From contig NW_027271282.1 in assembly GCF_040938485.1 (NCBI RefSeq), positions 62,001 through 126,000 of the forward strand: 64,000 nucleotides of DNA, written 5' to 3'. Under the pieces are notes generated by a model that worked only from the letters and a program-made list of their open reading frames with translations, was not told where the DNA came from and ran no database searches. A program made the translations under genes and the position numbers. This document shows, piece after piece, positions 1 to 63,801 of the stretch; positions within the stretch are counted from its first letter, which is position 1; every line of letters starts with the position of its first letter. The stretch is from Diadema antillarum. Its lineage: Eukaryota.

Positions 1-300
1 GCTTTTCAATTATGTCAATGTAACTAATGATCAGCATTAAAGGACATCTGAACAAAGATGATTGGCAAAGAACCGAAGGGGCAGAAAGAGACGAGGATGT
101 CAACGACGAATAAGAATAGATAGAAGAAGGAGAAGAAGGGAAGGAGGAGAAGAATACGAAGACAAAAAAATGTACAAATGAGTAAATTCGTTGCATTTGA
201 AAGGGAAGTAACAGACAGGATAAAAAGTAAAAGGAATGAAAGAAAAGGTTGGATCAGAAAAAAACTTAAACAGGAAGTAGGGAGAAAAAGATCGAGAAGA

Positions 301-446
301 CTATACCCCTTCAGAAGATGGTACTTTTCTCTTATTCATCACCACAGTCGCACAGGTCATCATCGATATGAGTAACACGACTACGAGCAGGGCGTACGTG
401 GTCGATGGCTGCTGAAGAACTCCTCGACGGAGACCAGCAATTGGAC
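301..446 (-). CDS. Paralog A terminal exon: juxtamembrane linker, TM helix, short tail (PIAGLRRGVLQQPSTTYALLVVVLLISMMTCATVVMNKRKVPSSEGV*)
   Basis: Acceptor tttcacag|GT at 447/446; hydrophobic run followed by KRK; stop TAG at 301-303; homologous exons at 37126-37262 and 52199-52335. Confidence 0.85.
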
Positions 447-1003: not shown

Positions 1004-1303
1004 CTTTCTCCGAGCCGAAAGTCGGACAATGCTCGAGACTTGAGAAAGTCCAACCAATCCCGTTCGTCCCCGAGCACGTGACATTGATGCATCCGTCGTG
1101 TGGGCGTGGTCTGAAGAGAGCTGAGGCGCAACTAGACGTGGAGAGCGTTGCGTTATCGACTTCGATGGTGTATGTGTGAAGGTGTGGGAACGGCTGGTCA
1201 TCAAGACTAACGTGACACGTTATGACGAGAATGACCTGACCGCCTTCTCCAGTGATCTCCTGGGTCTCGATGGAGAGAATGTTACTCGCTGGGGGCGCTT
1301 GCC
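1004..1303 (-). CDS. Paralog A exon Y2: atypical Ig-like domain (QAPPASNILSI...ITC...CINVTCSGTNGIG...HC)
   Basis: tttag acceptor and G|gtatgt donor; 300 nt, phase 1-1; inside ORF 981..1322; conserved in B and C. Confidence 0.85.
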
Positions 1304-2056: not shown

Positions 2057-2335
2057 CTGCTCTTTCCGGGCAGTAATTCTCCGTCGAAACAGTCTTTCCG
2101 TATCGATTTATACCGGTACACGATATAGCGATACATCTGTTTGGGCGATCTTCCATCATCGTCGAAGACGTGCTGGATCTTGATAGAATGTCTCCATCAG
2201 CAGCGATTTCAAACACACTGATCGGTGGAAACGGTTGATCGCTCGGATCTACGTGACACGAGATATTAAGATTTGTCCTCCAGTCATCCTCGTCTTCCGC
2301 GAACTTGATAGAGATGATGTTATGCGCAGGTGGGT
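2057..2335 (-). CDS. Paralog A exon X2: atypical Ig-like domain (DPPAHNIISIKF...ISC...CIAISCTGINRYG...NYC)
   Basis: gtcag acceptor and G|gtaaat donor; 279 nt, phase 1-1; ORF 2022..2378; homolog at 54134-54412. Confidence 0.85.
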
Positions 2336-3119
2336 CTGACGACAACAAAAAGATACAAAAAACAACATGGAAGTACACATTAAAACATGACAGGGGAAAG
2401 GCAAGACTTTGTCAAGACTTAATCTTGAATAAATTAAAGGTCCTGTTTACCTTTGGGAGCAGTGATATTAAAAAAGATATCACATTTGATGCGTATGTGT
2501 AGGTCTGTAGTATTAAAAATATCCTACCTTGCAAAATTATCGCAATAAAGCTTAAATATAAGACGATATCAGTGTATTTCTCAATAAACCGTAACTGCAG
2601 ACGGTTTAGTCTGGAAACATGTTTATTATAACTATTGTTCACGTTTGTGTATTTAACAACACTCAACATCGATTATAGAGATTCAAATTTTGACAGTGGT
2701 TGTTTCTATCCCTAACTCACATTTTAGAACTATTCTAAAGCACTAATGCCGGGTTTTGTTTCATCTGCAAATGGTAAATTATGCCTTTGATACAAACATT
2801 AATATTGAAAAACACTGATGTGAAGGAAGAAGTTTTTCTCCAGTGAAACCAAGGCTCGTTGGAATAATTACATATTCTATTGGTATCTTAATTAATATAA
2901 CAATAGTAACTTTAACATAAAAACACAGAAATGTATAACTGTAACAACAGTGTTGTGATAATGATAAAGACTGATGATAACAACAATAGTAATATCTTGT
3001 AAAATAAAGCAAAAGGGCATTGACTTCGAATGCAAAAATATAATTATTCAGAAAAGAAAAATCTGCTCTGATTTAATCGTGAAAAGCCCACTGTGTTGTC
3101 AGCGGTCTACTTAAATGGG

Positions 3120-4290
3120 ACAGTGCACTCCCATTACAACGAACACGGTTATAACGAAATTTTGTTACAACAAAGTAAGAATTCAGGTCCAAAAATTATC
3201 ATCATTAAAGTATATGGTGCAAAATTATTCGCTTATAACGGATACAGTTATAACGAAATTTTCGTCATAACAAAGTCGTTTTCAAGCTCCATTGACAAAG
3301 AAAGTCAAAAGAAATGTGTCTCATTAAAACGAAATGCAGATCGCTTACGAAATTACACATCGTATTTGCATGAACAAACGCTTCACATTTCAGTGTTCTT
3401 AAGTAGAAATCACTCTCTTCGTTCGCTCCCGATTTCACACTCTGTTACCGAGGAGAACCTGCGTTATGACATTTTAATCCGAAATGAAATAAGGTTCGTT
3501 ATTCCTAAGGTTCACGAATTCCGTACACCTAAATGACCGTAAATGCGACAATGAAATAGAATTCGTTATTACAAACCGTGCGGCGTTATAGCGGAAGTTT
3601 GTTATTTCTAAGTTTTGCTGATCAAAAAATGAAATAAGAATAGTTACTTACGAAGGTTTGTTAATCCAAAAATTATATAGGAACCTTCGTTATTAGTACT
3701 GTTCGCTAATCGGAGAAGGAAATAAGGTTCGTTAATCCGAAAGTGAACAAAAAAGGTGAGTATACTAGCATGCCTTCGGAATGACAACACTTATATCGCA
3801 TTCAGATTAATGAACATTCGGAATAACGAACCATTTTTTATCGTAAGATAAACGAACCTCCGGAATAATCAGCCGCCTTTCATTGCTGGATTAACGAGAC
3901 TTGGGGATAATGAATCTTGACGATAGTGAACCTTCGGAATAATGAGCCTTCGAAATGAGGAGCCCTCGGAATAACTAACCTTTGGAATCACTGTAACCAA
4001 ATCCCATAAATCTCCACTTTTCATATATGGTTCATAACATAAGCATGAAAATACATACAACTTTATGCTCTCTCTTAAAGGGAACATTATTGATCGAAAT
4101 CAAAGAGATAACATGGCATTTAACATTGCTTTTCAAAGTATGATGCGTATCCACCAAACAACGTACAATACACGGAGGGCTCGCGTGTTTTCGTCATACT
4201 CCTGTATTTGTTCGATTATAACGAATTTACAATATAACGACAGAAAACCGCTGGTCCCGAGGACGTCGTTATAACGGGATTGTACTGCAT
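3120..4290. mobile_element. Degenerate nested non-autonomous DNA-transposon fragments in an intron (outer pogo/Tc1-like termini; inner element with tandem cttcggaataacgaac motifs)
   Basis: Left cagtgcactcccattacaacga and right tcgttataacgggattgtactg are imperfect inverted termini; same block at ~55200-56285 in C. Confidence 0.45.
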
Positions 4291-4499
4291 TCCATCATTA
4301 TTACGCTATTGCCAATAAGAAATCTCGCAGGAACAGAGCACATCTAGAACATGATATTCTACAGGTTAATTTTTATCGTCTGTGCTCTCATATCCTTTAC
4401 TGAAGAGAGACGCCCTTTCTTACGGATATAGAATAATGTTATTAAGAAAAAAATGAAGAAAGGGACTTAGAAGGATCTAATAAGTTTCTCAAGGATTAC

Positions 4500-4790
4500 C
4501 TTTTGGACAGTGTGTTGCCCACGCAGAGGTGATCCCAACGCCGTTAGTCGCTGAACACGTGACGTTGACACACCTGTTTGGTCGTGGCCTGTGGACGGCC
4601 GAAGCCCAGCTAGTTGTAGACAGGACGGTCCCATCAACTCCAATCGTGTAAGAATAGAGGTACGGATAAGGCTGGTCGGTCAGGTTTGCTCGGCACAGTA
4701 TTAGCAGATTCATCAGGCGATCTTTGGTTTGGAATTCCAGAGTTTCGATGGACAAAATGTCAGCTGCTGGAGGGTGGCCGCTGTCTCCTC
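4500..4790 (-). CDS. Paralog A exon Y1: atypical Ig-like domain (HPPAADILSIE...LILC...CVNVTCSATNGVG...HC)
   Basis: tctcag acceptor and G|gtaatc donor; 291 nt, phase 1-1; ORF 4489..4833. Confidence 0.85.
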
Positions 4791-5317
4791 CTGAGATTGA
4801 CAGGTTGATGAGCGAATTAAGACGTGCTGACATTAGATATTAGGGTGAGGCTCATCATGAGAGCTTTTCTCGTTAAAAGAGTAAAACCTGTAATATCAGT
4901 GATATTCCCTTTGATAATAAGGTCATATAGGAAATTCGTAAAAAAAGTAGTCATACATGTTATATTGGCCATACTCGTAAGAATTGAAAATACTACAATT
5001 TATATAAGTTCAGATATAAAAGCTCTATATGTAGACGGATAAAGCTTGACAAATGAGTTTGTACGTTGCAAATATTTTTTTTCATAAATTCATTAAACAA
5101 TAATTTGAAGTGAAACTGAATTTTTCTTGTAATAATCACATGTCAGTTGGTATCCATCAGCACGGAAAGCTTCAACCCTTTAATAAAGGGTTAAAGCACC
5201 GTCATAATATGTGCTTTAAGAATAATAATTGACAGAGAAAAGCCCAAAGCGTTGCACACGTTCTTCAAAGTCCCATGGACATTATAAAGGGATAAACTTC
5301 ACAAATTAACGTCTTAC

Positions 5318-5599
5318 CATCGCTTCTTGGACAGTAGTTCTCTGTAGTGATCGTCCTACCGATGTCGTTGATACCGGTGCAGGAGATTTCAACGCATTCA
5401 CTCGGAATGGACTCAAGAGTCACGGACGGGGAGCCTGAAGAAGACTTGATGACGTCATCAATTGCAATCTCGTATTTTCCCATTGATGGAAATGGCTGAT
5501 CACGTGGGTTGACGAGGCACGTGATTTTAAGGCCATCTGTTTCTTGTCCGTCCTCGTTGTCAGCGATCTTGATCCCAATGATATCGTCTGCTGGAGCGT
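5318..5599 (-). CDS. Paralog A exon X1: atypical Ig-like domain (DAPADDIIGIKI...ITC...CVEISCTGINDIG...NYC)
   Basis: gacag acceptor and G|gtaaga donor; 282 nt, phase 1-1; ORF 5265..5606. Confidence 0.85.
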
Positions 5600-6799: not shown

Positions 6800-6988
6800 G
6801 CTGCACTTGCAAGTTTCGGGACCTTTCGCTGCCGATGAGATGACACTGAAGGACGCCCCCATTGTCAGCTGCAGTTGGAGTCAAGGTCAGCTCGCTACGA
6901 ACGTTGTAATATGTGTAATAATTGAAAGCGTAGGCGAGACCAGAGCTGAGAGACGCGTTTGCATATGTAGCAACAGCATTATCGCTTC
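6800..6988 (-). CDS. Paralog A exon: C-terminal half (E-F-G strands) of a C2-set Ig domain (YNVRSELTLTPTAADNGGVLQCHL)
   Basis: aag acceptor and C|gtaagt donor; 189 nt, phase 1-1; S-x-L-T-L-T-P-T-x-x-D-N-G-x-x-L-x-C is the nephrin/CD80-like E-F motif; only one Cys. Confidence 0.8.
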
Positions 6989-7584
6989 CTTTACATGAGA
7001 AACAGCAGAAAACATAAAATCCCCAAAAAAAGAAAGGAGTTTTGATTACGTTTATAGATAATCTTGTATGATACGTATCAGAAAGTTTGAGCAACGAATA
7101 TTAATCAAAGCATACAGATTTTGAACAAAATCTTTAACGAGTCATAGAATTAATTTTGAGAAACATGCTATTGGGTCTCGCATATCCTCTTCAGTGTATT
7201 TCCTTTTTTTTTTTTTTTACTTGCAACGACATGTAGTTTTCAGAATGTTACTCCTTGATTGTTTTTGTTGTATTTGTTATTGTTTAAGATCAATAAAACT
7301 CTTCGTGTCACCGTTCAAATAAAAAATCTAGTTCAATTTGAATATAAGAAATCATTTCTTAATTTGCGATAGTTTGAAATAGGCTTGTCTTTTCGATTTT
7401 TTTTTTTGGCTTTCTTTGAGAGGATTTCATTTTTTTTTGGATAAATAATTGATTGTAATAAATCAGACACTATCGCGGTTACCAAAATGATGATTTAAAA
7501 AGGTCATTATCATTTAAAATTCAGATGTGAGTCATTCTACCTCGCTATGCATGCAGTCATGAAATAGTAATAGTGCAAACTTAC

Positions 7585-7893
7585 GGTCTCCTTCACACCT
7601 CACTCCGGCGTCTTCACCATGACGACAGTTTTCACATCCCCATGGCAGATGAGGGCAATCAATCAGAGAGTTTTCAGTTCCTGCACAGGCAACCTCGTCA
7701 AGCCAGATAGGTCCAGATCCCTGCCCAAAGTGGGCGTTACCAAAATGGTTTGAGGCGGATGAGTAGCCAAGCTCTCTGCAAACGGCGTGCGCGTCGTTGA
7801 TATCCCAGCCATCGTCACACACCGTGCCCCACTGCCCGTTGCACGATATCTCAACTCGCCCCTCCCTTTCGCTCGAGCCGCCAGTCAGTCTCA
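7585..7893 (-). CDS. Paralog A exon: scavenger receptor cysteine-rich (SRCR) domain
   Basis: VRLxGG...EGRVEI...WGTVCDDGW...VCRELG...FGQGSGPIWLD.V.C.G.E..L..C...WG..NC.H.EDAGV.C; tacag acceptor and C|gtaagt donor; 309 nt. Confidence 0.95.
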
Positions 7894-8805
7894 CTGTAAT
7901 AACACCACATTCGTAATATACTACAAATGCACACAACACTCAAAACCAAACAAAACTCCTCAAACACACAAACACCCCTCCCCACACAAATTCATTTAGC
8001 AGGACAAGGTTTGCTAATCATTTTCATGTTTCTTGAATATGAGCATATTCATACATAGGGCCGCTGTTATCAGATCATATCATACACGTGTAAAGTAACA
8101 TTGACAAGTTTTTTTGATACTTAGACGTCAATACATTATACATTTTGCAGAAGGGTTGTGTATCAAGTGAAAGTATTTTGAACAAATATTGTTTTCTGTA
8201 CACCCATTATATTTGACAGCGTCGTCCGAAATGATGATAGAATTTAATTTACTTTAATTTACTTTACTATTACATTGTGGGTAGGCCTGGTTCGAGAAAA
8301 GACAAGGACTTCAGGCCCTACCATTGATGAAAACAGAGGATTCTGGCCTCTGTTAGCGGGCAAAAGTGTTTTCCTGAACAAGGCACAGCAAAACAAAACA
8401 GGAGGAAACGTCACTTGCCACCAGCGACCCAACCAAAGAGAACTACCAACATGCCGACTGCCTTTCTTCATTTGCACTTTCCACGTTGAATCGTTTTATA
8501 ATGATGATATTTTCTGTATGGAAATATTGCTACCTTCGTTACAATTTCACAATGTCGTGGAAGAACAAAACGAGTACTAGACAGTACTAGTAATTAGGAA
8601 ATAGATCCACGAACATTCAACGGTTTGGGTTAAAATTCAGACATTGTCAGATGAATGTATGATTGTGTGTCGACGCACACACATTGGTGTCTTCTTTAAC
8701 TCTACAACACTTGTCTTCATTGTGTGTGTGTGTGTGCGCGCGCGCTCATTGTGTGTATCTGTGTCTGTGTATATTCGAACATTTTCAAAAGCTGCATGTA
8801 CTCAC

Positions 8806-8916
8806 CAGCGAATCCGGAACATGCACTCCCGCAAGTATCACCGCAGTTATAATAATGTGTCCACTGTACTCCTTGACTTGGTCTGCCGCTATCCGCCAGA
8901 GTTGCTTTACCCGTCA
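8806..8916 (-). CDS. Candidate Cys-rich micro-exon of paralog A (TGKATLADSGRPSQGVQWTHYYNCGDTCGSACSGFA)
   Basis: Strong G|gtgagt donor shared with B (43394); phase 1-1 is possible from a gacag acceptor with a poor pyrimidine tract; the first half is not in the same frame as in B. Confidence 0.35.
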
Positions 8917-10107
8917 CTGTCCTTTATGTGTCATGCTTCATCATATACATTGACGATATATATCAGTGGGTGAAAACAAAGGCTGGGATGAAATCTTCCT
9001 CAATACTTTATTGAAATAACAGGAATGTGAGAAAATGACCTAAGGCATAAACATCAGAACAGCAGTCAAACACCCTCTTTATCACTTCCGTCTGACTATG
9101 ATTCAACACCTCCTGGTAAAATCAGTCAGTGGTCAGAAACCATGTCTTTATGCTTTTGTTCGAACCAGTGATCATGATTTTCAGCATTCTTCTACCCCTT
9201 TAGCAAAACTTACGAGATTAACGTGATAAATCGGATCAAATTAAAAATACATCCTATTGGTTGAAAGGGAAGAAAATACACCTTCATAGATGATTTTAAT
9301 GTGACGATCATCTGAATAATATTCTTTGTGTCCACCAAAAGTTGTTGTCATCCTTACGTTCCGTATCATTTCTCAGCATCTACATACTGAACACTCTCTA
9401 ATTTCTAGGAAGTAACTCGAGTGCGGACCTTCTACTCACACACGTAGAGTAGACGTTACGTCATTCAGTGCATTCGTCTTACAGCACTTTCTGCCCCTGG
9501 ATATAAAAAGTGAGTCATTAACACAAAACTACACTTCTGTAGAAGTTATTTCAGCTGGGGTAAAATTGATAAGGAATCAAACACGGTGGCTTGTCTGTAG
9601 CTTTAGAAAATGCTTACTTTAACTAGTGTTAAAAGGCTACTCTTCGCGATTTACATCACAGTCGGCAAAAGTTCACATCCGTTTCGAAAGTCCTTTGCTC
9701 TTGCCTTTGCGTCTTCCATGTGGTAAATATCTTTGTCACCAAACATATTTCAACCAATCAAAACTCTGTTGTCTTCTAAGGAGATTGCACATACAAATAT
9801 ATGCTCCTCAATAAGTACATCATGTTATTTCTTGCCTATCTGCTTACTTTCGCCTGTGCAGAGATCTTTTTGGACCTCGAAACTATACGTTTGCACCATG
9901 TACAAGATTACCAATTATAACCCTTACAGCCATAGGGCAGAAATTTTGTGCCTTTCTACTTAAGTGATTTCCATTTTGTGCACACTTCGGCCTGTCTTTA
10001 AGGTACTTTATAGTTTTTATATAGTCATAAACCTTCACGGCATACTATTCATTGGCTATTCTATATTTCAATTTTATGTTACTATTTTTTGCGGTCAGCC
10101 TACTCAC

Positions 10108-10283
10108 AGTACTACCGGTTCGGCTGACTTCGCTGGTAGTGGTGAAGCCGTCTGTGATTTGGACGCCATTCAAATACCAGCTTAGAATAGCCGAGCCGTA
10201 GACGTCATTTCCGGAGCACACTGCCGTGACTTCACGGCCAGCCCGGAGAGGAGAGGCTACCTTGAGGTTCATCGTCATGGCAG
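10108..10283 (-). CDS. Paralog A exon: N-terminal half (A-B-C strands) of a C2-set Ig domain (AGREVTAVCSG...AILSWYLNGVQI)
   Basis: ctttcag acceptor, phase 1; Ig B-strand Cys and C-strand Trp. The donor is uncertain: gtgagt after 10108 (phase 0), gtagta after 10116 or gtaggc after 10104 (both phase 1). Confidence 0.75.
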
Positions 10284-10687: not shown

Positions 10688-10748
10688 CACCATGATGAAT
10701 ATTTATGAGAAGAATCCCGACCTGAACCAACGCTCGGTAGTCAATCAT
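10688..10748 (-). CDS. Paralog A first coding exon: signal peptide (MIDYRALVQVGILLINIHHG)
   Basis: AAAATG start, hydrophobic core, G|gtaagg donor; an upstream ttcattcagcag acceptor implies a non-coding exon further 5'; homolog at 47115-47175. Confidence 0.75.
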
Positions 10749-31103: not shown

Positions 31104-31234
31104 NNNNNNNNNNNNNNNNNNNNNNNNNNNNNNNNNNNNNNNNNNNNNNNNNNNNNNNNNNNNNNNNNNNNNNNNNNNNNNNNNNNNNNNNNNNNNNNNN
31201 NNNNNNNNNNNNNNNNNNNNNNNNNNNNNNNNNN
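31104..31234. other. Assembly gap (N run)
   Basis: Run of N. Confidence 1.
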
Positions 31235-37125: not shown

Positions 37126-37262
37126 TCAGAAGATGATAATTTTTCTCTTATTCATCACCACGGTCGCACACGTCATCATCGATATGAGCAACACGACAAC
37201 GAGTAGGGCGTACGTGGTCGACGGCTGCTGAAGAACTCCACGACGAGGACCAGCAATCGGAC
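37126..37262 (-). CDS. Paralog B terminal TM exon (...VVMNKRKIIIF*)
   Basis: ttacag acceptor; inside ORF 37126..37392. Confidence 0.8.
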
Positions 37263-37448
37263 CTGTAAGCCAGACCCAAAATGGAAAAAAAAAGAAGACG
37301 GCATCATTAAGACAAAACACACAGGGAAAAAGTTTGTCAAAGGTTAAACAACCAAGGCCCATTGCTCTTTTATTTAATGTCATGTGTCGCACATATTTTG
37401 ACCTTTAAAGCAATCAGGTCCAAACATAAAAGAAAAAATACGGCATCT

Positions 37449-38701
37449 TTAAAGGACAAGTTCACGCACAGACATGTGGAATGAGAGAATGCAGCAATAT
37501 TAGTAGAACAGATCAGTGAAAGTTTGGGGAAAATCGGACAATCCGTTTACAAGTTATGAATTTTTAAAGTGTTTGCTCAGTCACTGCTGGATGAGAAGAC
37601 TACTCAGTGTATGATGTCATATGCGTACAACAACATAAGAAAATATAATGAGAATTTGACATATTTTTATTTTTTGAAAAAAAGTTCAAATTTCCTCGAC
37701 TTGTCACCGACGTAGGTTAAGGGTAATATTATTCCCCCTGCCTTCTGAAAGAGGCAAGTCCAGAGTTTTTTTATCATGCGAGAAAAGTGAAAATATGTTG
37801 AATTTTTTAATGTTTTTTTCATATCGTTGTACACATGTGACATCACAAGCTGTAGTAGTCTTCTCATCCAGCAGTGACCGAGCAGAAGCTTAAAAAATTC
37901 ATAACTTTTGAGCGGGTCGTCCGATTTTCTTCAAACTCTCACTGATGTGTTCTACTAGTATTGCTGCATTCACTCAATCCACATGTCTATGAAGGTGAAC
38001 TTCAAATTCATGATTTTCTTCCGTCGAGATGTTTTCATTGCAACTGATTGACAAATTGCCCTACATCGACGTAAATAAGCACTGAATTGATCAGTGTCTT
38101 AGTAGTAGCCATGATAAAAAATTCATGGGCGTACATACTCGAAAAAAAACATCTCGACGGAAGAAAATCATGAATTTGAATAACAAAGCAGTACCCGCTG
38201 CATGCTATAAGGATTAGAACCAACACTTGCTTTCGGGCGAAAGCTCGGTGGTCTAGTGGAGATGACGCCTGTCCGGTGATCAGGAGGTCGTAGGTTCAAA
38301 TCCTGCTCGAGTATGTACGCCCATGAATTTTTTATCATGGCTACTACTAAGACACTGATCAATTCAGTGCTTATTTACGTCGATGTAGGGCAATTTGTCA
38401 ATCAGTTGCAATGAAAACATCTCGACGGAAGAAAATCATGAATTTGAATAACAAAGCAGTACCCGCTGCATGCTATAAGGATTAGAACCAACACTTGCTT
38501 TCGGGCGAAAGCTCGGTGGTCTAGTGGAGATGACGCCTGTCCGGTGATCAGGAGGTCGTAGGTTCAAATCCTGCTCGAGTATGTACGCCCATGAATTTTT
38601 TATCATGGCTACTACTAAGACACTGATCAATTCAGTGCTTATTTACGTCGATGTAGGGCAATTTGTCAATCAGTTGCAAAGAAGGTGAACTTGTCCTTTA
38701 A
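37449..38701. mobile_element. TTAA-TSD MITE carrying a SINE-derived insertion in its right TIR, specific to B
   Basis: ttaaaggacaagttcac...ggtgaacttgtcctttaa; empty TTAA site in A at 481-484. Confidence 0.85.
38003..38680 (+). mobile_element. tRNA-derived SINE insertion: inverted partial copy plus two tandem 268-bp units, 12-bp TSD
   Basis: tRNA-like heads at 38243-38312 and 38511-38580 with A box TGGTCTAGTGG and B box GGTTCAAATCC; gaaggtgaactt at 37991-38002 and 38681-38692. Confidence 0.8.
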
Positions 38702-39007
38702 AGACAGAATGCACAGGGGAAAAAAACCCGCTTGTCAAAGATTAAACAACCAAACCCAGACCATGATGCCACACATACGTCATAACATTTGCCTTTTTAA
38801 TGTCATGTATCACCATGGTGATATTTAGAATTTCATATTGATGCATTCAATGTGAGTAGAGATAAGAAAGGCGTGCGTCAAGTCGGCAGTTATGCATCCA
38901 TGCTTTCTGGCATATTTCGTTACATATTTTTTACGCTTTCTCTCTAGGTTGCAGGAAACAAAATGGCAGCTTTATGCAAAAAAAAAAGTAGATGAAATAG
39001 ATAATAC

Positions 39008-39307
39008 CTTTCTCTGAGTCGAAAGTCGGACAATGCTCGTGACTGGTGAAGGTCCAACCAATCCCGTTCGTCCCCGAGCACGTGACATTGATGCACCTGT
39101 TGTGTGGACGTGGTCTGAAGACAGCTGAAGCGTAGCTGGACGTGGAGAGCGTGGCGTTGTCGACTTCGATGGCGTATGTGTGAAGGTGTGGGAACGGCTG
39201 GTCATTAAGACTAACGTGACACGTGATGACGAGAATGACCTGACCTCCTTCTCCATTGATCTCTTGGATCTTGATGGAGAGAATGTTACTCGCTGGGGGC
39301 GCTTGAC
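39008..39307 (-). CDS. Paralog B exon Y2 (atypical Ig-like)
   Basis: ctcag acceptor and G|gtatta donor; 300 nt; ORF 38931..39323. Confidence 0.8.
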
Positions 39308-40143
39308 CTGAGAAAGCAAGCATAAAATCAGTCCTTTTGACTTTTTCCCTTCGTCAGTTGTGTCTTTAACATCCAGAAAGATTGCATTTTCGCGCAGCGG
39401 TATATAAAAAAACCCCAACAACAACGTACAAACAAACAAACAAAAAACGCTGGAAGGTGAAAATCAATTCTAGGCGAATTATAACCATAAAATCATAAGT
39501 GAGACTCGTCATAAATGTTATATCCTCGTTAAAGGAGTAAATAAATGGATTGTCAGTGATAGTCCTTACAGCGACTGCACTTGTTGTAGTAGCAATACGT
39601 TGAACATTTAAAAAGCAGTCATGCATGTAATACAATGTATCAGAGACACTCATTCACGCACAAGCACTCTTCTCCATGTTATAGAAGTATTGATATTATA
39701 TTTATAACACATGATCATATTAATACCAACTAAATACTGTTAGCATTTTCTTTATTTTAGCACTGCCAAAACCTGTCGCCACTAACGTTCATGTATCATT
39801 CACCAATAAGGAATGTTATCAACGAAAATACTACTATCTTATCAGAGCAGGAATTAAAGTACTTTGTTAGACGGTTAAGACGGATGTAGTTTCAAATGAA
39901 TTTGTATATTTCAAATGAATTTTTTTTTTTAATTTGGTGAAACAATAAAGTGTATTCGAAGTGAAATGGATTTTTTTCTTGTAATGATCAAAGGGGGATT
40001 TGGAAGCTTTAACCTTTTCTGTGCTTTGTGTATCAATAAAATAAGATGCCAAAAAAGAAGACACCACGCTGATTCATGAGCTATCTAATGTCAATGACCA
40101 CAATAACGCAAAACTGGTTAGCTATCATAGATTATTGTCTTAC

Positions 40144-40422
40144 CACCGCTTCTTGGACAGTAGTTCACTGTAGTGGTTGTCCTACCGATGTCGTTGATAC
40201 CGGTGCAGGAGATTTCAACGCATTTACTCGGAATGGACTCAAGGGTCACGGAAGGGGAGCTTGAAGATGCCTGAATGACGTCATCAATTGCAATCTCGTA
40301 TGTTCCCATTGGTGGAAATGGCTGGTCACGTGAGTTGACGTGACACGTTATCCTTAGGCCATTGGCTCCTTGTCCGTCCTCGTCAGCGATCTTGATCCAG
40401 ATGATATCTTCTGCTGGAGCGT
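40144..40422 (-). CDS. Paralog B exon X1 (atypical Ig-like)
   Basis: gacag acceptor and G|gtaaga donor; 279 nt; ORF 40118..40429. Confidence 0.8.
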
Positions 40423-41146: not shown

Positions 41147-41335
41147 GCTGCACTTGCAAGTTTCGGGACCTTTCGCTGCCAATGAGATGACACTGAAGGA
41201 CGCCCCCATTGTCAGCTGCAGTTGGAGTTAACGTCAGGTTGCTACGAACGTTGTAATATGTGAAATAATTGAAACCGTAGCCGAGACCCGAGTTAATAGA
41301 CTCGTTTGCATACGTAGCAACAGCATTATCGCTTC
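41147..41335 (-). CDS. Paralog B Ig C-terminal-half exon (GSDNAVATYANESINSGLGYGFNYFTYYNVRSNLTLTPTAADNGGVLQCHL...)
   Basis: Same splice sites and length (189 nt) as A 6800-6988; open frame. Confidence 0.8.
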
Positions 41336-41956: not shown

Positions 41957-42265
41957 GGTCTCCCTCACACCTCACTCCTGCGTCTTCACTATGATCACAA
42001 TTGTGACATCCCCATGGCAGACGAGGGCAATCAGTCAGAGAGTTTTCCCTTCCAGCACAGGCAACGTCGTCAAGCCAGATAGGTCCAGATCCCTGCCCAA
42101 AATGGCCTCCCCCATAATGAGCTGAGGCGGATGAGTAGCCAAGCTCTCTGCAAACGACGTGCGCGTCGTTGATATCCCAGCTATCGTCACACACCGTGCC
42201 CCACTGCCCGCTACATGATATCTCGACCCGCCCCTCTCTTTCCTCCGATCCACCAAACAGCCTCA
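41957..42265 (-). CDS. Paralog B SRCR exon
   Basis: ORF 41874..42266; tacag acceptor and C|gtaagt donor; 309 nt. Confidence 0.93.
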
Positions 42266-43393: not shown

Positions 43394-43516
43394 CCGCATA
43401 TCCGGGACACTCACTTTCGCGGCAAGTACCGCTGTCGCAGTAATAACTATTAGTGTATCCACTGTACTCCTTGACTTGGTCTGCCTCTGTCGGGCAGAGT
43501 TGCTTTACCCCTGTCC
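43394..43516 (-). CDS. Candidate Cys-rich micro-exon of paralog B (TGVKQLCPTEADQVKEYSGYTNSYYCDSGTCRESECPGYA)
   Basis: taag acceptor and G|gtgagt donor; 123 nt, phase 1-1, open, four Cys. Confidence 0.4.
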
Positions 43517-46538: not shown

Positions 46539-46703
46539 TTCGGCTGGCTTCGCTGGTGGTGATAAAGCCGTCTGTGATTTGGACGCCATTCAAATACCAT
46601 GTTAGAACAGCCGACCCGTGGATGTCATATCCGGAGCACACTGCCGTGTCTTCACGGCCAGCCCGCAGAGGAGAGGGAACTTCGAGGTTCATCGTCATGG
46701 CAG
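46539..46703 (-). pseudogene. Paralog B Ig N-terminal-half exon, donor lost; reads into the insertion and stops at 46501-46503
   Basis: AAMTMNLEVPSPLRAGREDTAVCSG...LTWYLNG (ORF 46501..46785); no GT between the homology end and the stop. Confidence 0.65.
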
Positions 46704-47114: not shown

Positions 47115-47175
47115 CACCATGATGAATATTTATGAGAAGAATCCCAACGGAAACCAACGCCTGGCAGTCCATCAT
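47115..47175 (-). CDS. Paralog B signal-peptide exon (MMDCQALVSVGILLINIHHG)
   Basis: AAAATG start and G|gtaagg donor; homolog of 10688-10748. Confidence 0.75.
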
Positions 47176-52198: not shown

Positions 52199-52335
52199 TC
52201 AGAAGATGGTATTTTTTCTCTTATTCATCACCACAGTCGCACAGGTCATCATCGATATGAGCAACACGACTACGAGCAGGGCGTACGTGGTCGATGGCTG
52301 CTGAAGAACTCCTCGACGGAGACCAGCAATTGGAC
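52199..52335 (-). CDS. Paralog C terminal TM exon (...VVMNKRKNTIF*)
   Basis: ttcacag acceptor; ORF 52199..52381. Confidence 0.85.
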
Positions 52336-52553
52336 CTGTGAAAAAAAGAAAAAAAAAACCCATTCTTTTCAGATAGAGCACAGTTAAAAAAATACATCGA
52401 AGGTTTAAACAACCACGGACCAGACTATGATGCCATATACATTACCATCATTAACTTTTCCAATGTTCATGTATTGCCATTTCGAGTACAGTCATTTGTA
52501 TAAACGTATTCAATGTGATAAGCGTGATGAAACGTACGTCAAGTCGGCAGCTG

Positions 52554-53030
52554 TTAAAGGGACATTCCAGACGATTTTCATAATTTCATATCATGTAGTA
52601 CATAAATCGACAACTCCATGTATAGATTTGTGGAATTCATTGTGGTTCTTGAGCAGAGAAACAATACTTTGAAGAAAAAAAAACTTAAACAAATAATTAC
52701 ACTGAACGAGGATGATGACATAGGAGGTTCACATATTTCAGAAATGTAGCAGTGTTATTGCATTAAAATACCGCTTGCTTGCAAGTTATCCTGTGTATAA
52801 TCTATGCATGCCTTCTTCTTTTGTTCTGCTTCCTTGATCCCCAACTCATTCATTCTTTATGGTGACTCTGCCATGTCATCATCCTTGTTCATTGCAATTT
52901 GTTCTAAATTTTGAAAATATCCTTATTCCTCATCCCAATTATCACAAATTCTGAAACTCTGTCCTCAGTAAAACTAATTTATAGTTGTTCAAATGTAAAA
53001 ATCTGAAAACCATCCGGAGGTCTCCTTTAA
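52554..53030. mobile_element. TTAA-TSD MITE (Kolobok-like), specific to C
   Basis: ttaa|agggacattccagacg...catccggaggtctcct|ttaa; empty TTAA in A at 675-678. Confidence 0.8.
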
Positions 53031-53236
53031 AGATTATGTTTGCCTGGTCATTTAGGAGTGTATGAGTTCAAATTTGAATATAATTAGAAAGAAGCAATAC
53101 AAAAGCACCATGTAGCAAGCAGTGACGAAGGTATCATTCATGCTACACAGTATTTCACAGTGCACTTTTTTTTACGCTTGCTCTAATAACGTCGAAAGAA
53201 GCGAGGGAAATCGCTATACAAAGTAGATAGTAATAC

Positions 53237-53536
53237 CTTTCTCCGACCCGAAAGTCGGACAATGCTCGAGACTTGAGAAGGTCCAACCAATCCCGTTCGT
53301 CCCCGAGCACGTGACATTGACGCATCCGTCGTGTGGGCGTGGTCTGAAGAGAGCTGATGCGCAACTAGACGTGGAGAGCGTGGCGTTGTCGACTTCGATG
53401 GTGTATGTGTGAAGGTGTGGGAACGGCTGGTCATCAAGACTAACGTGACACGTTATGACGAGAATGACCTGACCGCCTTCTCCAGTGATCTCCTGGGTCT
53501 CGATGGAGAGAATGTTACTCGCTGGTGGCGCTTGCC
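53237..53536 (-). CDS. Paralog C exon Y2
   Basis: 300 nt, phase 1-1; ORF 53214..53555. Confidence 0.85.
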
Positions 53537-54133
53537 CTAAAAACCAAACAAACATGAAATCAATGTGGGCAGCGGCATCTGGAATTCTTTGAAGCTTTCA
53601 AACTTGCTTGTGTTGATGGGCAATGGGAAGACTGCCCAGAATTGATGTGACAAGGGCATTGACCATGCATTTGTGGGTTCATTGACGAAACATGCCATTT
53701 TGCTGTTGGGTTAGAGATAATAACACATTGTACTTTTAGTGTCACATTGTACTTTACTTTGTTTACATGCGATATATTGTATACTTTCGTCGGAAATGAA
53801 ATAAATGAAATGAAATGAAATAAGAACTTCTGGTAAATTAATTTCAACAATTCGATTTCTTTCAACTAATGGCATAAAAGTCTTCTAAAGCGGAGTACAA
53901 TAGAAGTTGATTATTATCATCTAAATTTTTGGGGGAGGAATTAAAATTAACATTAGAATTTAGAGATGAGGGTACTTGATGTAGTAATCTTGATTACAGG
54001 CAAAAAAAAAAATGTTAATAGAGATGCATGTATTTGGAATAAGGAATTGGCAGAACATATATCGCCGATATTAATTGCATAGAAATTCATTCCATTTTTT
54101 AAGTCCTTGTTCCTCTACGCACAAGATATTCAC

Positions 54134-54412
54134 CTGCTCTTTCCGGGCAGTAATTCTCCGTGGAAACAGTCTTTCCGTATCGATTTATACCGGTACACGA
54201 TATAGCGATACATCTGTTTGGGCGATCTTCCATCATTGTCGAAGATGTGTTGGCTCTTGATAGAATGTCTCCATCAGCAGCGATTTCAAACACACTGATC
54301 GGTGGAAACGGTTGATCGCTCGGATCTACTTGACACGAGATATTAAGATTTGTCCTCCAGTCATCCTCGTCTTCCTCGAACTTGATAGAGATGATGTTAA
54401 GGGCAGGTGGGT
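54134..54412 (-). CDS. Paralog C exon X2
   Basis: 279 nt; G|gtgaat donor; ORF 54099..54455. Confidence 0.85.
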
Positions 54413-56497
54413 CTGACAACAAAAAGATACAAAAAACAACAACATGGAAGTACACATGAAAACATGACAGGGGAAAGGCAACACTTTGTCAAGACTTAAT
54501 CTTAAATAAATTAAAGGTCCTGTTTACCTTTGGGAGCAGTGATTTAAAGAAAGTTCAAGATATCACATTTGATGCGTATGTGCAGGTCTGTACTATTAAA
54601 AATATCTTACCATGTAAAATTATCGCAATAAAGCTTAAATATAAGAAGATATCAGTGTATTTCTCAATAAACCGTAACTGTAGACGGTTTAGTCTGGAAA
54701 CATTTTTATTATAACTATTGTTCACGTTTTAGTATTTAACAACACTCAACATCGATCATAGCGATTCAAATTTTTACAGTGGTTGTTTCTATCCCTAACT
54801 CACATTTTAGAACTATTCGAAAGCACTAATGCCGGGTTTTGTTTCATCTGCAAATGGTAAATTATGCCTTTGATACAAAAATTAATATTGAAAAACACTG
54901 GTGTGAAGGAAGAGGTTTTTCTCCATTGAAACCAAGGCTCATTGGAATAATTTCATATTCTATTGGTATCTTAATGAATATAACAATAGTAACTTTAACA
55001 TAAAAACACAGAAATGTATAACTGTAACAACAGTGTTGTGATAATGATAAAGGCTGATGATAACAACAATAGTAATATCTTGTAAAATAAAGCAAAAGGG
55101 CATTGACTTCGATTGCAAAATATAATTATTCAGAGAAGAAAAGTCTGCTCTGATTTAATCGTGAAAAGCCCACTGTGTTGTCAGCGGTCTACTTAAATGG
55201 GACAGTGCACTCCCATTACAACGAACACGGTTATAACGAAATTTCGTTTCAGCAAAGTAAGAATTCAGGTCCAAAAATTATCATCATTAAAGGCTATGGT
55301 GCAAAATTATTCGCTTATAACGGATACAGTTATAACGAAATTTTCGTCATAACAAAGTCGTTTTCAAGCTCCATTGACAAAGAAAGTCAAAAGAAATGTG
55401 TCCCATTAAAACGAAATGCATATCGCTTACGAAATTACACATCGTATTTGCATGAACAAACGCTTCACATTTCAGTGTTCTTAAGTAGAAATCACTCTCT
55501 TCGTTCGCTCGCAATTTCACACTCCGTTACTGAGGAGAACGTGCGTTATGACATTTTAATCCGAAATGAAATAAGGTTCGTTATTCCTAAGGTTCACGAA
55601 TTCCGTACACCTAAATGACCGTAAATGCGACAATGAAATTGTTTGTTATTTCTAAGTTTTGCTGATCAAAGAATGATATAGGAACCTTCGTTATTAGTAC
55701 TGTTCGCTAATCGGAGAAGGAAATAAGGTTCGTTAATCCGAAAGTGAACAAAAAGGTGAGTATACTAGCATGCCTTCGGAATGACAAAACTTATCGCATT
55801 CAGATTAATGAAAATTCGGAATAACGAACTATTTCTTATCGTAAGATAAACGAACCTCTGGAATAACCAGCCGTCTTTCACTGCTGGATTAACGAGCCTT
55901 CGGGATAATGAATCTTGGGGATAGTGAACCTTCGGAATAATGAGCCTTCGAAATGAGGAGCCCTCGGAATAACGAACCTTTGGAATCACTGTAACCAAAT
56001 CCCATAAATCTCCACTTTTCATACATGTGTTCATAACATAAGCATGAAAATACATACAACTTTATGTTCTCTCTTAAAGGGAACATTTGATCGAAATTAA
56101 TGAGATAGCATGGCATTTAACATTGCTTTTCAAAGTATGATGCGTATCCACCAAACAACGTACAATACACGGAGGGCTCGCGTGTTTTCGTCACACTCCT
56201 GTATTTGTTCGATTATAACGAATTTACGATATAACGACAGAAAACTGCCGGTCCCGAGGACGTCGTTATAACGGGATTGTACTGCATTCCATCATTATTA
56301 CGCTATTGCCAATAAGAAATCTCGCAGGAACAGAGCACATCTAGAACATGATATTCTACAGGTTAATTTTTATCGTCTGTGCTCTCATATCCTTTACTGA
56401 AGATAGACTCCCTTTCTTACGGATATAGAATAATATCATTAAGAAAAAAAATGAAGAAAGGGACTTAGAAGGATCTAATAAGTTTCTCAAGGATTAC

Positions 56498-56788
56498 CTT
56501 TCGGACAGTGTGTTGCCCTCGCAGAGGTGATCCCAACGCCGTTAGTCGCTGAACACGTGACGTTGACACACCTGTTTGGTCGTGGCCTGTGGACGGCCGA
56601 AGCCCAGCTAGTTGTAGACAGGACGGTCCCATCAACTCCAATCGTGTAAGAATAGAGGTACGGGTAAGGCTGTTCGGTCAGGTTTGCTCGGCACAGTATT
56701 AGCAGATTCATCAGGCGATCTTTGGTTTGGAATTCCAGGGTTTCGATGGACAAAATGTCAGCTCCTGGAGGATGGCCGCTGGCTCCTC
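56498..56788 (-). CDS. Paralog C exon Y1
   Basis: 291 nt; ORF 56487..56831. Confidence 0.85.
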
Positions 56789-57229
56789 CTGAGATTGACA
56801 GGTTGATGAGCGAGTTAAGACGTGGTGACATTATATATTAGGGTGAGGCTCATCATGAGAGCTTTTCTCGTTAAAAGAGTAAAACCTGTAATATCAGTGA
56901 TATTCCCTTTAATAGTAATGTCATATAGGAAATTCTTAAAAAGTAGTCATGCATGTTATATCGGCCATTATCGTAAGAATTGAAAATACTACAATTTATA
57001 TAAGTTCAGATATAAAAGCTCTTTATGTAGACGGATAAAGCTTGACAAATGAGTTTGTATGTTGCAAATATTTTTTTCATAAATTTACTGAAACAATGAT
57101 GCGGATTTGAAGTGAAACTGAATGTTTCTTGTAATAGTAATCACATGTCAGTTGGTATCAATCAGCACGGAAAGCTTCAACCCTTTAATAAAGGGTTAAA
57201 GCACCGTCATAATACGTGCTTTAAGAATA

Positions 57230-57796
57230 TTAAAGGACAAGTCCACCTTCATATACATAAGGATTGAGAGAATGCAGCAATATTAGTAGAACACATCAGT
57301 GAAAGTTTGAGGAAAATTGGACAATCCGTTCAAAAGTTACGAACATTTTAAGTATCTGCGCAGGCACTGCTGGAGGAGAAGACTACTACAGTGTGTGATG
57401 TCACATGCGTACAACTATATAAGGAAAATAAAAAGAGAATTTCACAAAGCTTTACTTTTTGAATAAAGTGCAAATTTCTTCGACTTGCTAATGACGTATG
57501 TTAAGGGTAATATTATTCCCCCTGCCTTCTGAAAGAGAGAAGTCGAGTGTTCTTTTATTTTGCGAGAAAAATGGAAATATGTTGAATTTTCTTTATTCTT
57601 TCCTTATATCGTTGTACTCATGTGACATCATGAGCTATACTAGTCTTTTCATCCAGCCGTGACAGAGCAGAAACTTCAAAAATTCATAACTTCTTAACAG
57701 ATTGTCCAATTCTCCTCAAACTCTCACTGATGTGTTCTACTAATATTGCTGCATTCACTCAACCCACATGTCTATGAGGGTGAACTTGTCCTTTAA
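57230..57796. mobile_element. TTAA-TSD MITE (same family as 27952-28519), specific to C
   Basis: ttaaaggacaagtccacc...gtgaacttgtcctttaa; absent in A at ~5225. Confidence 0.88.
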
Positions 57797-57885
57797 TTGA
57801 CAGAGAAAAGCCCAAAGCGTTGCACACGTTCTTCAAAGTCCCATGGACATTATAAAGGGATAAACTTCACAAATTAACGTCTTAC

Positions 57886-58167
57886 CATCGCTTCTTGGAC
57901 AGTAGTTCTCTGTAGTGATCGTCCTACCGATGTCGTTGATACCGGTGCAGGAGATTTCAACGCATTCACTCGGAATGGACTCAAGGGTCACGGAAGGGGA
58001 GCCTGAAGATGGCTGGATGACGTCATCAATTGCAATCTCGTATGTTCCCATTGGTGGAAATGGCTGGTCACGTGGGTTGACGTGACACGTGATATTAAGG
58101 CCATCTGTTTCTTGTCCGTCCTCGTTGCCAGCGATCTTGATCCAGATGATATCGTCTGCTGGAGCGT
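57886..58167 (-). CDS. Paralog C exon X1
   Basis: 282 nt; ORF 57833..58195. Confidence 0.85.
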
Positions 58168-58418
58168 CTGTCACGTGACGAACGTTTATAGGCAACAGAA
58201 ATTTGTTCAGATTAAAAGATGGCGATCATGATGACGAAGAATTAAAAGATAAAGAGTTACAGATTAAAAGCAAAAGTCACAATCAATGATTAAATGGACA
58301 AAATCACTCTTGCTAATGTATTGCATTACGAAATTGAATCCTCTGCTGTGGGAATCGATCCCTTAAAACGAATTGAAAATGCTTTGAAGTGCTTACCCTG
58401 CATATGATACTGTGAAAG

Positions 58419-62705: not shown

Positions 62706-62894
62706 GCTGCACTTGCAAGGTTCGGGACCTTTCGCTGCCAATGAGATGACACTGAAGGACGCCCCCATTGTCAGCTGCTGTTGCAGTTAACGTCATCTCG
62801 CTACGAACGTTGTAATACTTGTAATAATTGAAACCGTAGGCGAGACCAGCGGTAACAGACTCATTTGCATATGTAGCAACTCCATTATCTCTTC
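62706..62894 (-). CDS. Paralog C Ig C-terminal-half exon
   Basis: 189 nt, phase 1-1; ORF 62680..62934. Confidence 0.8.
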
Positions 62895-63492: not shown

Positions 63493-63801
63493 GGTCTCCC
63501 TCACACCTCACTCCCGCGTCTTCACCGTGACTGCAGTCGTGGCATCCCCAGGCATAACGAGGGCAAGCGAGCAGAGAGTTTTCAGTTCCAGCACAGCCGA
63601 CGCTGTCAAGCCAGATAGGTCCAGATCCCTGCCCAAAGTGGGCTCCAGTATAATGAGCTGAGGCGGATGAGTAGCCAAGCTCTCTGCAAACGGCGTGCGC
63701 GTCGTTGATATCCCAGCCATCGTCACAAACCGTGCCCCACTGCCCGTTGCACGATATCTCAACTCGCCCCTCTCTTTCGCTTGAGCCGCCAGTCAGTCTC
63801 A
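63493..63801 (-). CDS. Paralog C SRCR exon (gene continues beyond the window end)
   Basis: 309 nt; tacag acceptor and C|gtgagt donor; ORF 63440..63916. Confidence 0.93.

What the first reader, a model, noticed from the sequence alone, without database searches (positions are those of the whole stretch)
6800..10283. SRCR domain apparently inserted inside a split Ig domain
Seen: exon 10108-10283 encodes only the A-B-C strands of a C2-set Ig (one Cys, then WYLNG). Exon 6800-6988 encodes only the E-F-G strands (SELTLTPTAADNGGVLQC, one Cys). A complete SRCR exon (7585-7893) lies between them. The SRCR-to-Ig-C-half adjacency is identical in all three paralogs, and the AT-rich intron between them holds no Ig N-half. 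Established: C2-set Ig folds need the B-F disulfide, and SRCR N- and C-termini lie close together, which suits loop insertion. Inference: the Ig folds around an SRCR displayed from its C'-E region, a germline-encoded domain-in-a-loop receptor. If a phase-1 donor is used, skipping the SRCR exon would restore a plain Ig. I do not know a described family with this layout.
Basis: partly seen in the sequence, partly recalled or inferred. Interest (0 to 1): 0.88.

Follow-up and report, generated by a model that had tools for sequence, protein, structure and literature searches.

The report
SRCR domain nested inside split Ig
A Diadema-type sea urchin carries tandem surface-receptor genes in which a scavenger-receptor (SRCR) exon sits between the two exons of one C2-type immunoglobulin domain, so the SRCR is probably displayed from a loop of that Ig; the layout is real and family-wide in the DNA but has no transcript or experimental structure behind it yet.

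Summary
Exon 10283-10108 encodes Ig strands A to C'/D, with one Cys and then Trp. Exon 7893-7585 is a complete 8-Cys SRCR. Exon 6988-6800 encodes strands E-F-G with one Cys. Pfam C2-set_2 matches the halves on abutting profile positions (14-55 and 56-80).

The same exon order recurs in all eight loci fetched from Diadema setosum and D. antillarum. All 14 N-half exons seen are open, with dN/dS 0.2-0.5. A few RefSeq models already splice N-half, SRCR and C-half together.

An AlphaFold2 model of one such homologue aligns to single C2-set Ig domains across both halves (Z 10-12). A second homologue folded poorly.

Three corrections. With it, the N-half's strong phase-0 GTGAGT donor gives an intact 696-aa gene. 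Skipping the SRCR exon would therefore not restore a plain Ig. Paralog B's N-half exon has no usable donor, yet B is otherwise an intact 455-aa gene.

The scan also noted this layout on another piece of this genome (s1-208696). I found no paper on it. Verdict: real, probably a nested-domain receptor, a new variant of a known kind.

The parts
10688..10748 (-). Gene A exon 1: start codon and signal peptide (20 codons plus 1 nt), donor G|GTAAGG, phase 1
   Evidence: Homologous exons lie upstream of the N-half in B, L002, L003, L005, L006 and L007.
10108..10283 (-). Gene A exon 2: Ig N-half (strands A-B-C-C'/D; Cys of VCSG, Trp of WYLNG). Phase-1 acceptor, strong phase-0 donor ACT|GTGAGT.
   Evidence: C2-set_2 positions 14-55; dN/dS 0.2-0.5; the profile hits Ig B-C strands in PDB, E 2e-5 to 7e-4.
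8806..8863 (-). Acceptor gtacag|TGG in phase 0, donor G|GTGAGTAC in phase 1.
   Evidence: The donor G|GTGAGTA is conserved 0.4-1.9 kb upstream of the SRCR exon in all 10 genes examined. RefSeq model P0085 uses the homologous exon.
7585..7893 (-). Gene A exon 4: complete SRCR domain with 8 Cys on one phase 1-1 exon
   Evidence: PF00530 E 1.2e-33. for the homologue model (Z 14-15.5 to solved SRCR domains).
6800..6988 (-). Gene A exon 5: Ig C-half. About 25 aa of extension, then strands E-F-G with the F-strand Cys (LQC). Phase 1-1.
   Evidence: (C2-set_2 positions 56-80).
5318..5599 (-). Gene A exon 6: first Trp-less four-Cys Ig-like stalk domain (X1), phase 1-1
   Evidence: No Pfam hit.
4500..4790 (-). 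Gene A exon 7: stalk domain X2
2057..2335 (-). Gene A exon 8: stalk domain X3
1004..1303 (-). Gene A exon 9: stalk domain X4
301..446 (-). Gene A exon 10: transmembrane helix, short basic tail and stop codon. The ten exons give a 2091-nt, 696-aa open frame.
47115..47175 (-). Gene B exon 1: signal peptide, phase-1 donor
46540..46703 (-). Gene B Ig N-half exon. It is open through the Ig part, but no GT follows position 46585 before the in-frame TAG (46504-46506), so it has no usable 3' donor.
43394..43486 (-). Gene B mini-exon: 93 nt, phase 1-1, 3 Cys
41957..42265 (-). Gene B SRCR exon
41147..41335 (-). Gene B Ig C-half exon
37126..40422 (-). Gene B stalk and anchor: X exons 40422-40144 and 39307-39008, TM exon 37262-37126. 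With the N-half skipped, B is an intact 455-aa frame.
63493..63801 (-). Gene C SRCR exon. Its upstream exons lie beyond the window end.
62706..62894 (-). Gene C Ig C-half exon
52202..58225 (-). Gene C stalk (open frames 57836-58225, 56490-56837, 54102-54488, 53217-53597) and TM open frame 52202-52441. Exon ends were not refined.

Best explanation
The window holds three tandem paralogs, on the minus strand, of a gene family found here only in Diadema. They encode single-pass type I membrane proteins.

Gene A reads as follows:
- signal peptide;
- Ig N-half (strands A, B, C, C'/D);
- a 19-aa Cys-rich linker encoded by a mini-exon;
- a complete 8-Cys SRCR domain;
- Ig C-half (about 25 aa of extension, then strands E, F, G);
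- four Trp-less four-Cys Ig-like stalk domains;
- a transmembrane helix and a 10-residue tail.

Inferred mechanism. The two Ig halves fold into one C2/C1-type beta-sandwich, closed by the canonical B-F disulfide. The linker plus SRCR loops out from the D-E end, so the SRCR is held at the membrane-distal tip on an Ig scaffold.

Inferred origin. A phase 1-1 SRCR exon was shuffled into the phase-1 intron that already split an Ig domain. Tandem duplication and diversification followed.

Inferred function, by analogy only: a binding or recognition receptor, as proposed for other echinoid SRCR families.

Shown: exon anatomy, phases, open frames, conservation and HMM complementarity. Inferred: splicing, the folding of the halves into one domain, and function.
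For: 1. The exon boundaries are exact, and a 10-exon, 696-aa frame without stops can be assembled for gene A.
2. C2-set_2 matches 14-55 on the N-half and 56-80 on the C-half. The same split occurs in P0020, P0018, P0024 and P0085, and the combined score passes the cut-off in two of them.
3. The N-half profile significantly hits Ig B-C strands in PDB sequences, including the CD276 IgC domain.
4. All 8 fetched Diadema loci carry SP, N-half, mini-exon, SRCR and C-half in that order, even where the RefSeq model omits the N-half. All 14 N-half exons are open with conserved Cys and Trp. N-half dN/dS is 0.2-0.5.
5. In the window-like subfamily the N-half has a conserved phase-0 donor and the mini-exon a conserved phase-0 acceptor. 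Gene A keeps that rule with different sites.
6. RefSeq models XP_072173864.1, XP_071503323.1, XP_072181430.1 and P0085 (D. antillarum) splice N-half, SRCR and C-half.
7. In the AF2 model of P0020:22-258 (pLDDT 70.8), single Ig domains align 88-99 residues over model range 1..237. These include CD22 d2 (Z 12.3), Rst and SYG-1 D2 (Z 12.0), Necl-4, CD166, RAGE and Lutheran. SRCR domains align to 59-172.
8. N-half plus mini-exon alone gives no Ig hit. No Ig N-half lies in the SRCR-to-C-half intron, and no frame-conserved hidden exon lies elsewhere.
Against: - No transcript evidence was available. The RefSeq models are predictions, most omit the N-half, and those that include it use weak donors (GTCTGA, GTGTGG, GTACAA).
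- Gene A's mini-exon acceptor has a poor pyrimidine tract.
- Only 1 of 5 AF2 models for P0020 was of moderate confidence (the others 41-57). The second target, P0085, which has the mini-exon and a short C-half, gave pLDDT about 30 for both halves.
- Gene B is an otherwise intact gene whose N-half exon cannot be spliced. RefSeq P0025 skips an intact N-half. This hints that the C-half may exist without its partner.
- On its own the C-half's Ig signal is weak (Pfam E 0.1; PDB E 0.6).
- The alignment behind the AF2 model is shallow: 27 sequences, of which 4 carry the N-half.
Confidence: 0.6

Rival explanations
1. The halves are adjacent in the primary sequence but do not form one intramolecular Ig. 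The N-half (with the Cys-rich mini-exon, whose ...YYC or ...L.YC motif resembles an F strand) and the C-half might be separate partial or disordered modules. They might pack on other domains. Or they might complement in trans, the N-half of one chain with the C-half of another, giving dimers.
For: The mini-exon carries 2-4 Cys, and an F-strand-like A-T-L-x-Y-C motif at canonical spacing from the B-strand Cys in L002, L005, L006 and L007. AF2 failed on P0085, which includes the mini-exon. The Cys count in the A and B mini-exons is odd.
Against: N-half plus mini-exon gives no Pfam Ig hit. The C-half matches the E-F-G positions of C2-set_2 in four paralogs. The one confident AF2 model assembles the halves in cis, at Z 10-12 to single Ig domains. 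The mini-exon is degenerate in L003 and short in subfamily 1, so it cannot be a required strand.
Confidence: 0.17
2. The N-half exon is usually skipped. The main product is then signal peptide, optional mini-exon, SRCR and C-half. The C-half would be a beta extension of the SRCR head rather than half of an Ig, and the N-half would be a minor or regulated cassette.
For: The SP donor, mini-exon (in B), SRCR and C-half are all phase 1, so skipping stays in frame. Gene B without its donor-less N-half is an intact 455-aa frame. RefSeq P0025 joins SP directly to SRCR although an intact N-half exon lies between them. Most RefSeq models lack the N-half.
Against: All 14 N-half exons are open with conserved Cys and Trp and dN/dS 0.2-0.5, even at saturated dS, so the exon is translated. 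Many N-half-less models start at arbitrary Met residues just before the SRCR, which marks them as 5'-truncated predictions. An orphan E-F-G half-sandwich with a free Cys is structurally implausible.
Confidence: 0.18
3. Artefact or relic: the N-half is a decaying remnant of an ancestral Ig exon, or an assembly or duplication artefact, and is not part of any protein.
For: Gene B's copy has lost its donor. Donors elsewhere are weak.
Against: The same order is seen in three independent assemblies: the window, GCA_964275005.2 and GCA_040938485.1. There are no stops or frameshifts in 14 copies, and dN/dS is below 1.
Confidence: 0.03

Closest known systems
CD80-like C2-set Ig domains (Pfam PF08205): CD22 d2, Rst/SYG-1/Neph1 D2, nectin-like Ig2, CD166, RAGE C1, Lutheran d2
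   Same: The best HMM family for both halves and the best structural matches for the assembled halves in the AF2 model (Z 10.5-12.3). The B-strand Cys, the C-strand Trp 13 residues later and the E-F motif ending in Cys are all present.
   Different: In those proteins the domain is contiguous. Here about 125-150 residues (Cys-rich linker, SRCR and an extension) interrupt it between C'/D and E, and each half is on its own exon.
Group B SRCR domains (DMBT1, CD163, CD5/CD6, M2BP/LGALS3BP, SCARA5) and the expanded sea urchin SRCR gene families
   Same: A full 8-Cys SRCR on a single phase 1-1 exon (PF00530 E 1e-33). The homologue model matches solved SRCR domains at Z 14-15.5 and 1.8-2.5 A. It belongs to an echinoid multigene family in tandem arrays. 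RefSeq names some members 'galectin-3-binding protein A-like' or 'M130-like'.
   Different: As I recall them, known SRCR proteins carry the domain in series with other modules (tandem SRCR, CUB, ZP, collagen, BTB). I know none with the SRCR nested inside another domain. No AFDB cluster or ESM Atlas model matched more than the SRCR part (TM by query 0.49 or less).
Integrin beta subunit: beta-I domain inserted in the Ig-like hybrid domain (my own knowledge; the phrase 'inserted in the hybrid' occurs in the full text of the reviews listed, e.g. PMC10137042, which I did not open)
   Same: A beta-sandwich whose sequence is interrupted by a whole globular domain emerging from one end. This shows that such nesting is physically workable and can couple the two domains.
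   Different: The hybrid domain is not a canonical disulfide-bonded IgSF C2 domain. The insert is a vWA-like fold and the family is ancient. There is no homology to the case here.
Antibodies with a domain in a loop: bovine ultralong CDR-H3 knobs and LAIR1-insert antibodies (my own knowledge, not checked here)
   Same: An Ig domain is used as a scaffold that displays a foreign disulfide-rich or Ig-like module from a loop.
   Different: Those inserts sit in CDR3 (the F-G loop) of V domains. The LAIR1 inserts arise somatically, and the bovine knobs derive from germline D segments with somatic diversification. Here the insert is a separate germline exon, lies at the D-E end of a C-type domain, and is fixed in a whole gene family.
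Split PH domains (alpha-syntrophin PDZ-in-PH, PLC-gamma) (my own knowledge)
   Same: The concept of two half-domains, separated in sequence by other domains, that reassemble.
   Different: They are unrelated folds, intracellular, with no disulfide.

Membership tests
IgSF C2-set (PF08205 C2-set_2) | B-strand Cys followed by the C-strand Trp about 12-14 residues later | tested here: met
   VCSG...SWYLNG has a Cys-Trp spacing of 13. It is invariant in 7 aligned N-halves and in all 14 exons.
IgSF C2-set (PF08205 C2-set_2) | E-F motif (S-x-L-x-L ... D/N-x-G ... L-x-C) carrying the second Cys | tested here: met
   SELTLTPTAADNGGVLQC lies in the C-half. L, Q and C are invariant in 16 sequences. It aligns to profile positions 53/56-80/86.
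IgSF C2-set (PF08205 C2-set_2) | HMM score at or above Pfam's gathering cut-off (21 bits) | tested here: inconclusive
   The window halves score 18.9 and 13.1 bits separately, each below the cut-off. They could not be submitted joined. Homologues P0018 (24.3 bits, 2 stretches) and P0020 (23.3 bits) pass. P0024 (17.9) and P0085 (15.4) do not.
IgSF C2-set (PF08205 C2-set_2) | One two-sheet beta-sandwich formed by strands A-G | tested here: inconclusive
   In the AF2 model of P0020:22-258, single Ig domains align 88-99 residues over model range 1-237 at Z 10-12.3. Only one of five models was confident, and P0085 failed. The window's own spliced protein could not be folded.
IgSF C2-set (PF08205 C2-set_2) | B-F disulfide bond | not testable with these tools
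   Exactly one Cys lies in each half. No coordinates or chemistry were available.
SRCR superfamily, group B (PF00530) | HMM score above the cut-off over the full domain | tested here: met
   115.8 bits against a cut-off of 26.1, covering profile positions 2-100 of 100.
SRCR superfamily, group B (PF00530) | Eight conserved Cys, with the whole domain on a single exon | tested here: met
   There are 8 Cys in exon 7893-7585 (translation). It is one phase 1-1 exon in A, B, C and in L001-L008.
Nested (inserted) domain architecture | The parent domain is split in sequence by a complete guest domain in the mature mRNA and protein | not testable with these tools
   The genomic order and phases allow it, and four RefSeq predictions encode it. 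No transcript reads or protein data were accessible.

The most novel reading that the evidence does not exclude
The split Ig works as a switch or a combinatorial device. The SP donor, the SRCR exon and the C-half exon are phase 1 in every gene mapped, and the N-half acceptor is phase 1 too. Genes also differ in whether the N-half can be spliced: gene A can, gene B cannot. Cells could therefore make closed heads (N-half plus C-half in cis) and open heads (an orphan C-half). The open heads could be completed in trans by the N-half of a neighbouring paralog's product. That would give combinatorial hetero-dimers of SRCR heads from a tandem gene array.
Probability: 0.08. Interest if true: 0.88.

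Novelty: new variant of a known kind. Interest (0 to 1): 0.62.

Why it matters
Ig and SRCR domains are two of the commonest building blocks of animal surface receptors. As far as I know they are described only as beads on a string.

A germline family in which one is nested in a loop of the other would be a new way of building a receptor head. It would rigidly couple the SRCR to an Ig scaffold at the tip of a stalk. It would also be a clean natural example of exon shuffling into an intra-domain intron.

The family has dozens of tandem copies and was found here only in Diadema, among the proteins searched. These features fit fast-evolving echinoid immune-type receptors, in a genus whose mass die-offs make its immunity of practical interest.

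The claim can be tested directly with RT-PCR and one recombinant head domain.

Tried and rejected
1. CCG|GTAGTA (exon end 10116) does give an in-frame 675-codon CDS. It is weak and not conserved. The conserved family rule in the window-like subfamily is a phase-0 donor plus a phase 0-to-1 mini-exon, so I prefer that path.

2. A hidden Ig C-half in the N-half-to-SRCR intron. The A/B alignment shows 4-nt and 10-nt indels upstream of the mini-exon core and no other frame-conserved block.

3. A hidden Ig N-half in the SRCR-to-C-half intron. None exists in A, B or C.

4. The mini-exon as the true F strand. N-half plus mini-exon gives no Pfam hit, and the exon is degenerate in L003.

5. A word-index search with the C-half open frame found nothing in the 60-190 aa range. 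A search with the N-half region of P0085 found only P0085 itself. So no transcript-derived fragments were recovered.

6. AF2 of P0085:21-252 was uninformative.

7. Foldseek against PDB, AFDB clusters and ESM Atlas returned only SRCR matches.

8. Literature searches found no description of the family.

9. The window's own spliced protein could not be given to the fold or HMM tools without typing it, so homologues held under protein ids were used instead.
Full report
**What is in the window**

The window is eukaryotic, about 38% GC, with one N run at 31104-31234. On the minus strand it carries three tandem paralogs, A, B and C. This is shown by self-alignment and by stop-to-stop frames.

- Exon 10283-10108 starts after ttctttcag and ends before GTGAGT.
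- Exon 7893-7585 starts after attacag and ends before GTAAGT.
- Exon 6988-6800 starts after a pyrimidine tract plus aaag and ends before GTAAGT.

**Domain calls**

Pfam calls the middle exon a full SRCR (E 1.2e-33). The first exon hits C2-set_2 on profile positions 14-55 of 89 (E 0.0016). The third hits C2-set_2 on positions 56-80 (E 0.1). Each half has exactly one Cys. The first half has the Trp 13 residues after its Cys.

The downstream frames are four exons for a Trp-less four-Cys domain with no Pfam hit, followed by a transmembrane exon.

**Gene structure and the missed mini-exon**

A signal-peptide exon (10748-10688, donor G|GTAAGG, phase 1) precedes the N-half. The N-half starts in phase 1, but its strong donor ACT|GTGAGT is phase 0. 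The SRCR and C-half exons are phase 1-1.

Instead, the 2.2-kb intron holds a 58-nt mini-exon, 8863-8806. Its acceptor is gtacag|TGG (phase 0) and its donor is G|GTGAGTAC (phase 1). It encodes 19 residues with three Cys. With it, ten exons give a clean 2091-nt, 696-aa frame.

The weak-donor path without the mini-exon is also in frame, so both remain possible. Either way the order N-half, SRCR, C-half holds.

**Relatives**

A profile of the three C-halves was searched against 1.84 billion representative proteins. It hit, at E below 1e-8, only proteins that proved to be RefSeq predictions from Diadema antillarum and D. setosum. A family search with P0020 again found close relatives only in Diadema. 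Other echinoderms gave SRCR-only matches.

Four models encode N-half, SRCR and C-half: P0020, P0018, P0024 and P0085. P0085's model uses a homologous mini-exon, phase 0 to 1.

Most other models start at an arbitrary Met just before the SRCR. I fetched eight loci. Every one has an intact N-half exon between a signal-peptide-like exon and the SRCR exon, including loci whose model omits it (P0008, P0025, P0002, P0060, P0016).

In total 14 N-half exons were seen, all open, with invariant Cys and Trp. N-half dN/dS is 0.19-0.51 wherever dS is measurable. So the N-half is a translated exon, not a relic.

**Splice logic across the family**

In the window-like subfamily (L002, L003, L005, L006, L007) the N-half ends at a conserved phase-0 GTACAA. 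In L002, L005, L006 and L007 an open mini-exon follows with a phase-0 acceptor. It carries the motif ...AATL.YC...TCPGYA (C..DDYA in L002) and the donor G|GTGAGTA. L003's copy has a stop.

Gene A has lost the ancestral donor region through a deletion relative to B and the other loci. It keeps the phase rule with a new GTGAGT donor and a different phase-0 acceptor.

The other subfamily (L001, L004, L008) has a conserved phase-1 GT(C/T)TGA donor and a short mini-exon, GSYCSRPCDG(K/R)T.

**Gene B**

Its N-half exon has no GT after position 46585 and runs into an in-frame TAG (46504-46506). B's mini-exon is 93 nt, phase 1-1. SP, mini-exon, SRCR, C-half, two stalk domains and the TM exon form an intact 455-aa frame.

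So B probably makes a head with an orphan C-half, or it is a very recent casualty. This is the main internal evidence against an obligatory cis-assembled Ig.

**Do the halves form one domain?**

- Sequence. The 12-55 and 53-86 split of C2-set_2 recurs in four homologues. In P0018 and P0020 the whole-protein score passes Pfam's cut-off, and C1-set passes too.
- The N-half profile hits Ig B-C strands in PDB sequences at E 2e-5 to 7e-4, including the CD276 IgC domain. The C-half alone is weak (B7-H6 IgC E-F strands, E 0.6).
- N-half plus mini-exon alone gives no Ig hit.
- Structure. AF2 on P0020:22-258 with a 27-sequence alignment gave pLDDT 70.8 and pTM 0.53 for the best model; the other four scored 41-57. 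It has five strands before the SRCR and three after.
- VIA-align placed SRCR domains on model residues 59-172 (Z 14-15.5). It placed single Ig domains on model range 1..237 with 88-99 aligned residues (CD22 d2 Z 12.3, Rst D2 12.0, SYG-1 D2 12.0, and others). That is only possible if both halves share one sandwich, with the SRCR looping out between the fifth strand (D) and E.
- AF2 on P0085:21-252 failed, with both halves at about pLDDT 30.
- No coordinates were available, so the disulfide geometry is unmeasured.

**Novelty checks**

Foldseek against AFDB clusters and the ESM Atlas matched only the SRCR portion (TM by query 0.49 or less). Full-text searches found no description. The 2026 D. antillarum genome preprint mentions SRCR only as an expanded family.

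The scan's own notes list the same layout on another piece of this genome (s1-208696, s1-208695). I treat these as leads only.

**Verdict**

The function as a recognition receptor is by analogy only.

Noticed in passing
window 1004-5599 (-), also 53217-58225 and 39008-40422: The stalk is built of about 95-aa exons (phase 1-1) encoding a Trp-less, four-Cys, Ig-like-looking domain in two alternating types. Pfam gives no hit. Copy number differs between paralogs: four in A and C, two in B.
   Followed up: partly
window 18628-21582 (-): An uninterrupted 985-aa open frame with an endonuclease (Exo_endo_phos) and a reverse transcriptase (RVT_1, E 5e-35). It is an apparently intact non-LTR retrotransposon in the A-B intergenic region.
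   Followed up: partly
window 13984-16172: A GC-rich block (0.495) containing two near-identical copies in inverted orientation. Frames 14289-14708 (-) and 15448-15867 (+) are almost the same protein. There is a weak GIY-YIG match (E 5e-4, below the cut-off) at 15726-16172. It looks like a head-to-head Penelope-like element pair.
   Followed up: partly
window 8600-10107 versus 43181-44703: The intron between the N-half and the mini-exon is about 84% identical between A and B overall, with visibly near-identical stretches. That is no lower than the adjacent N-half exon block (87%). This may be a conserved non-coding element or simply relaxed coding constraint.
   Followed up: no
window 44973-46539: About 1.6 kb directly after B's N-half exon has no counterpart in A or in the fetched Diadema loci. 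The next 270 nt (44973-44703) is shared with L005 and L006 but missing in A. So A carries a deletion and B probably an insertion at the same exon-intron junction.
   Followed up: partly
window 26565-27656 (-): A 364-aa open frame, Ser/Thr/Pro-rich and then coiled-coil-like, with no Pfam hit. It may be an ORF1-type protein of a retroelement.
   Followed up: no
L005 21800-21970, L006 30989-31684, L007 27210-27868, L008 32322-32510: Each fetched Diadema locus has a second SP or N-half exon a few kb downstream of the gene. The family therefore lies in head-to-tail tandem arrays in both species.
   Followed up: partly
L004 4001-4156 (RefSeq model P0008): The model's 'signal peptide' is an upstream open-frame extension of the mini-exon. 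An intact N-half exon lies 1.2 kb further upstream (2691-2864), so this N-terminus is probably a prediction artefact.
   Followed up: partly
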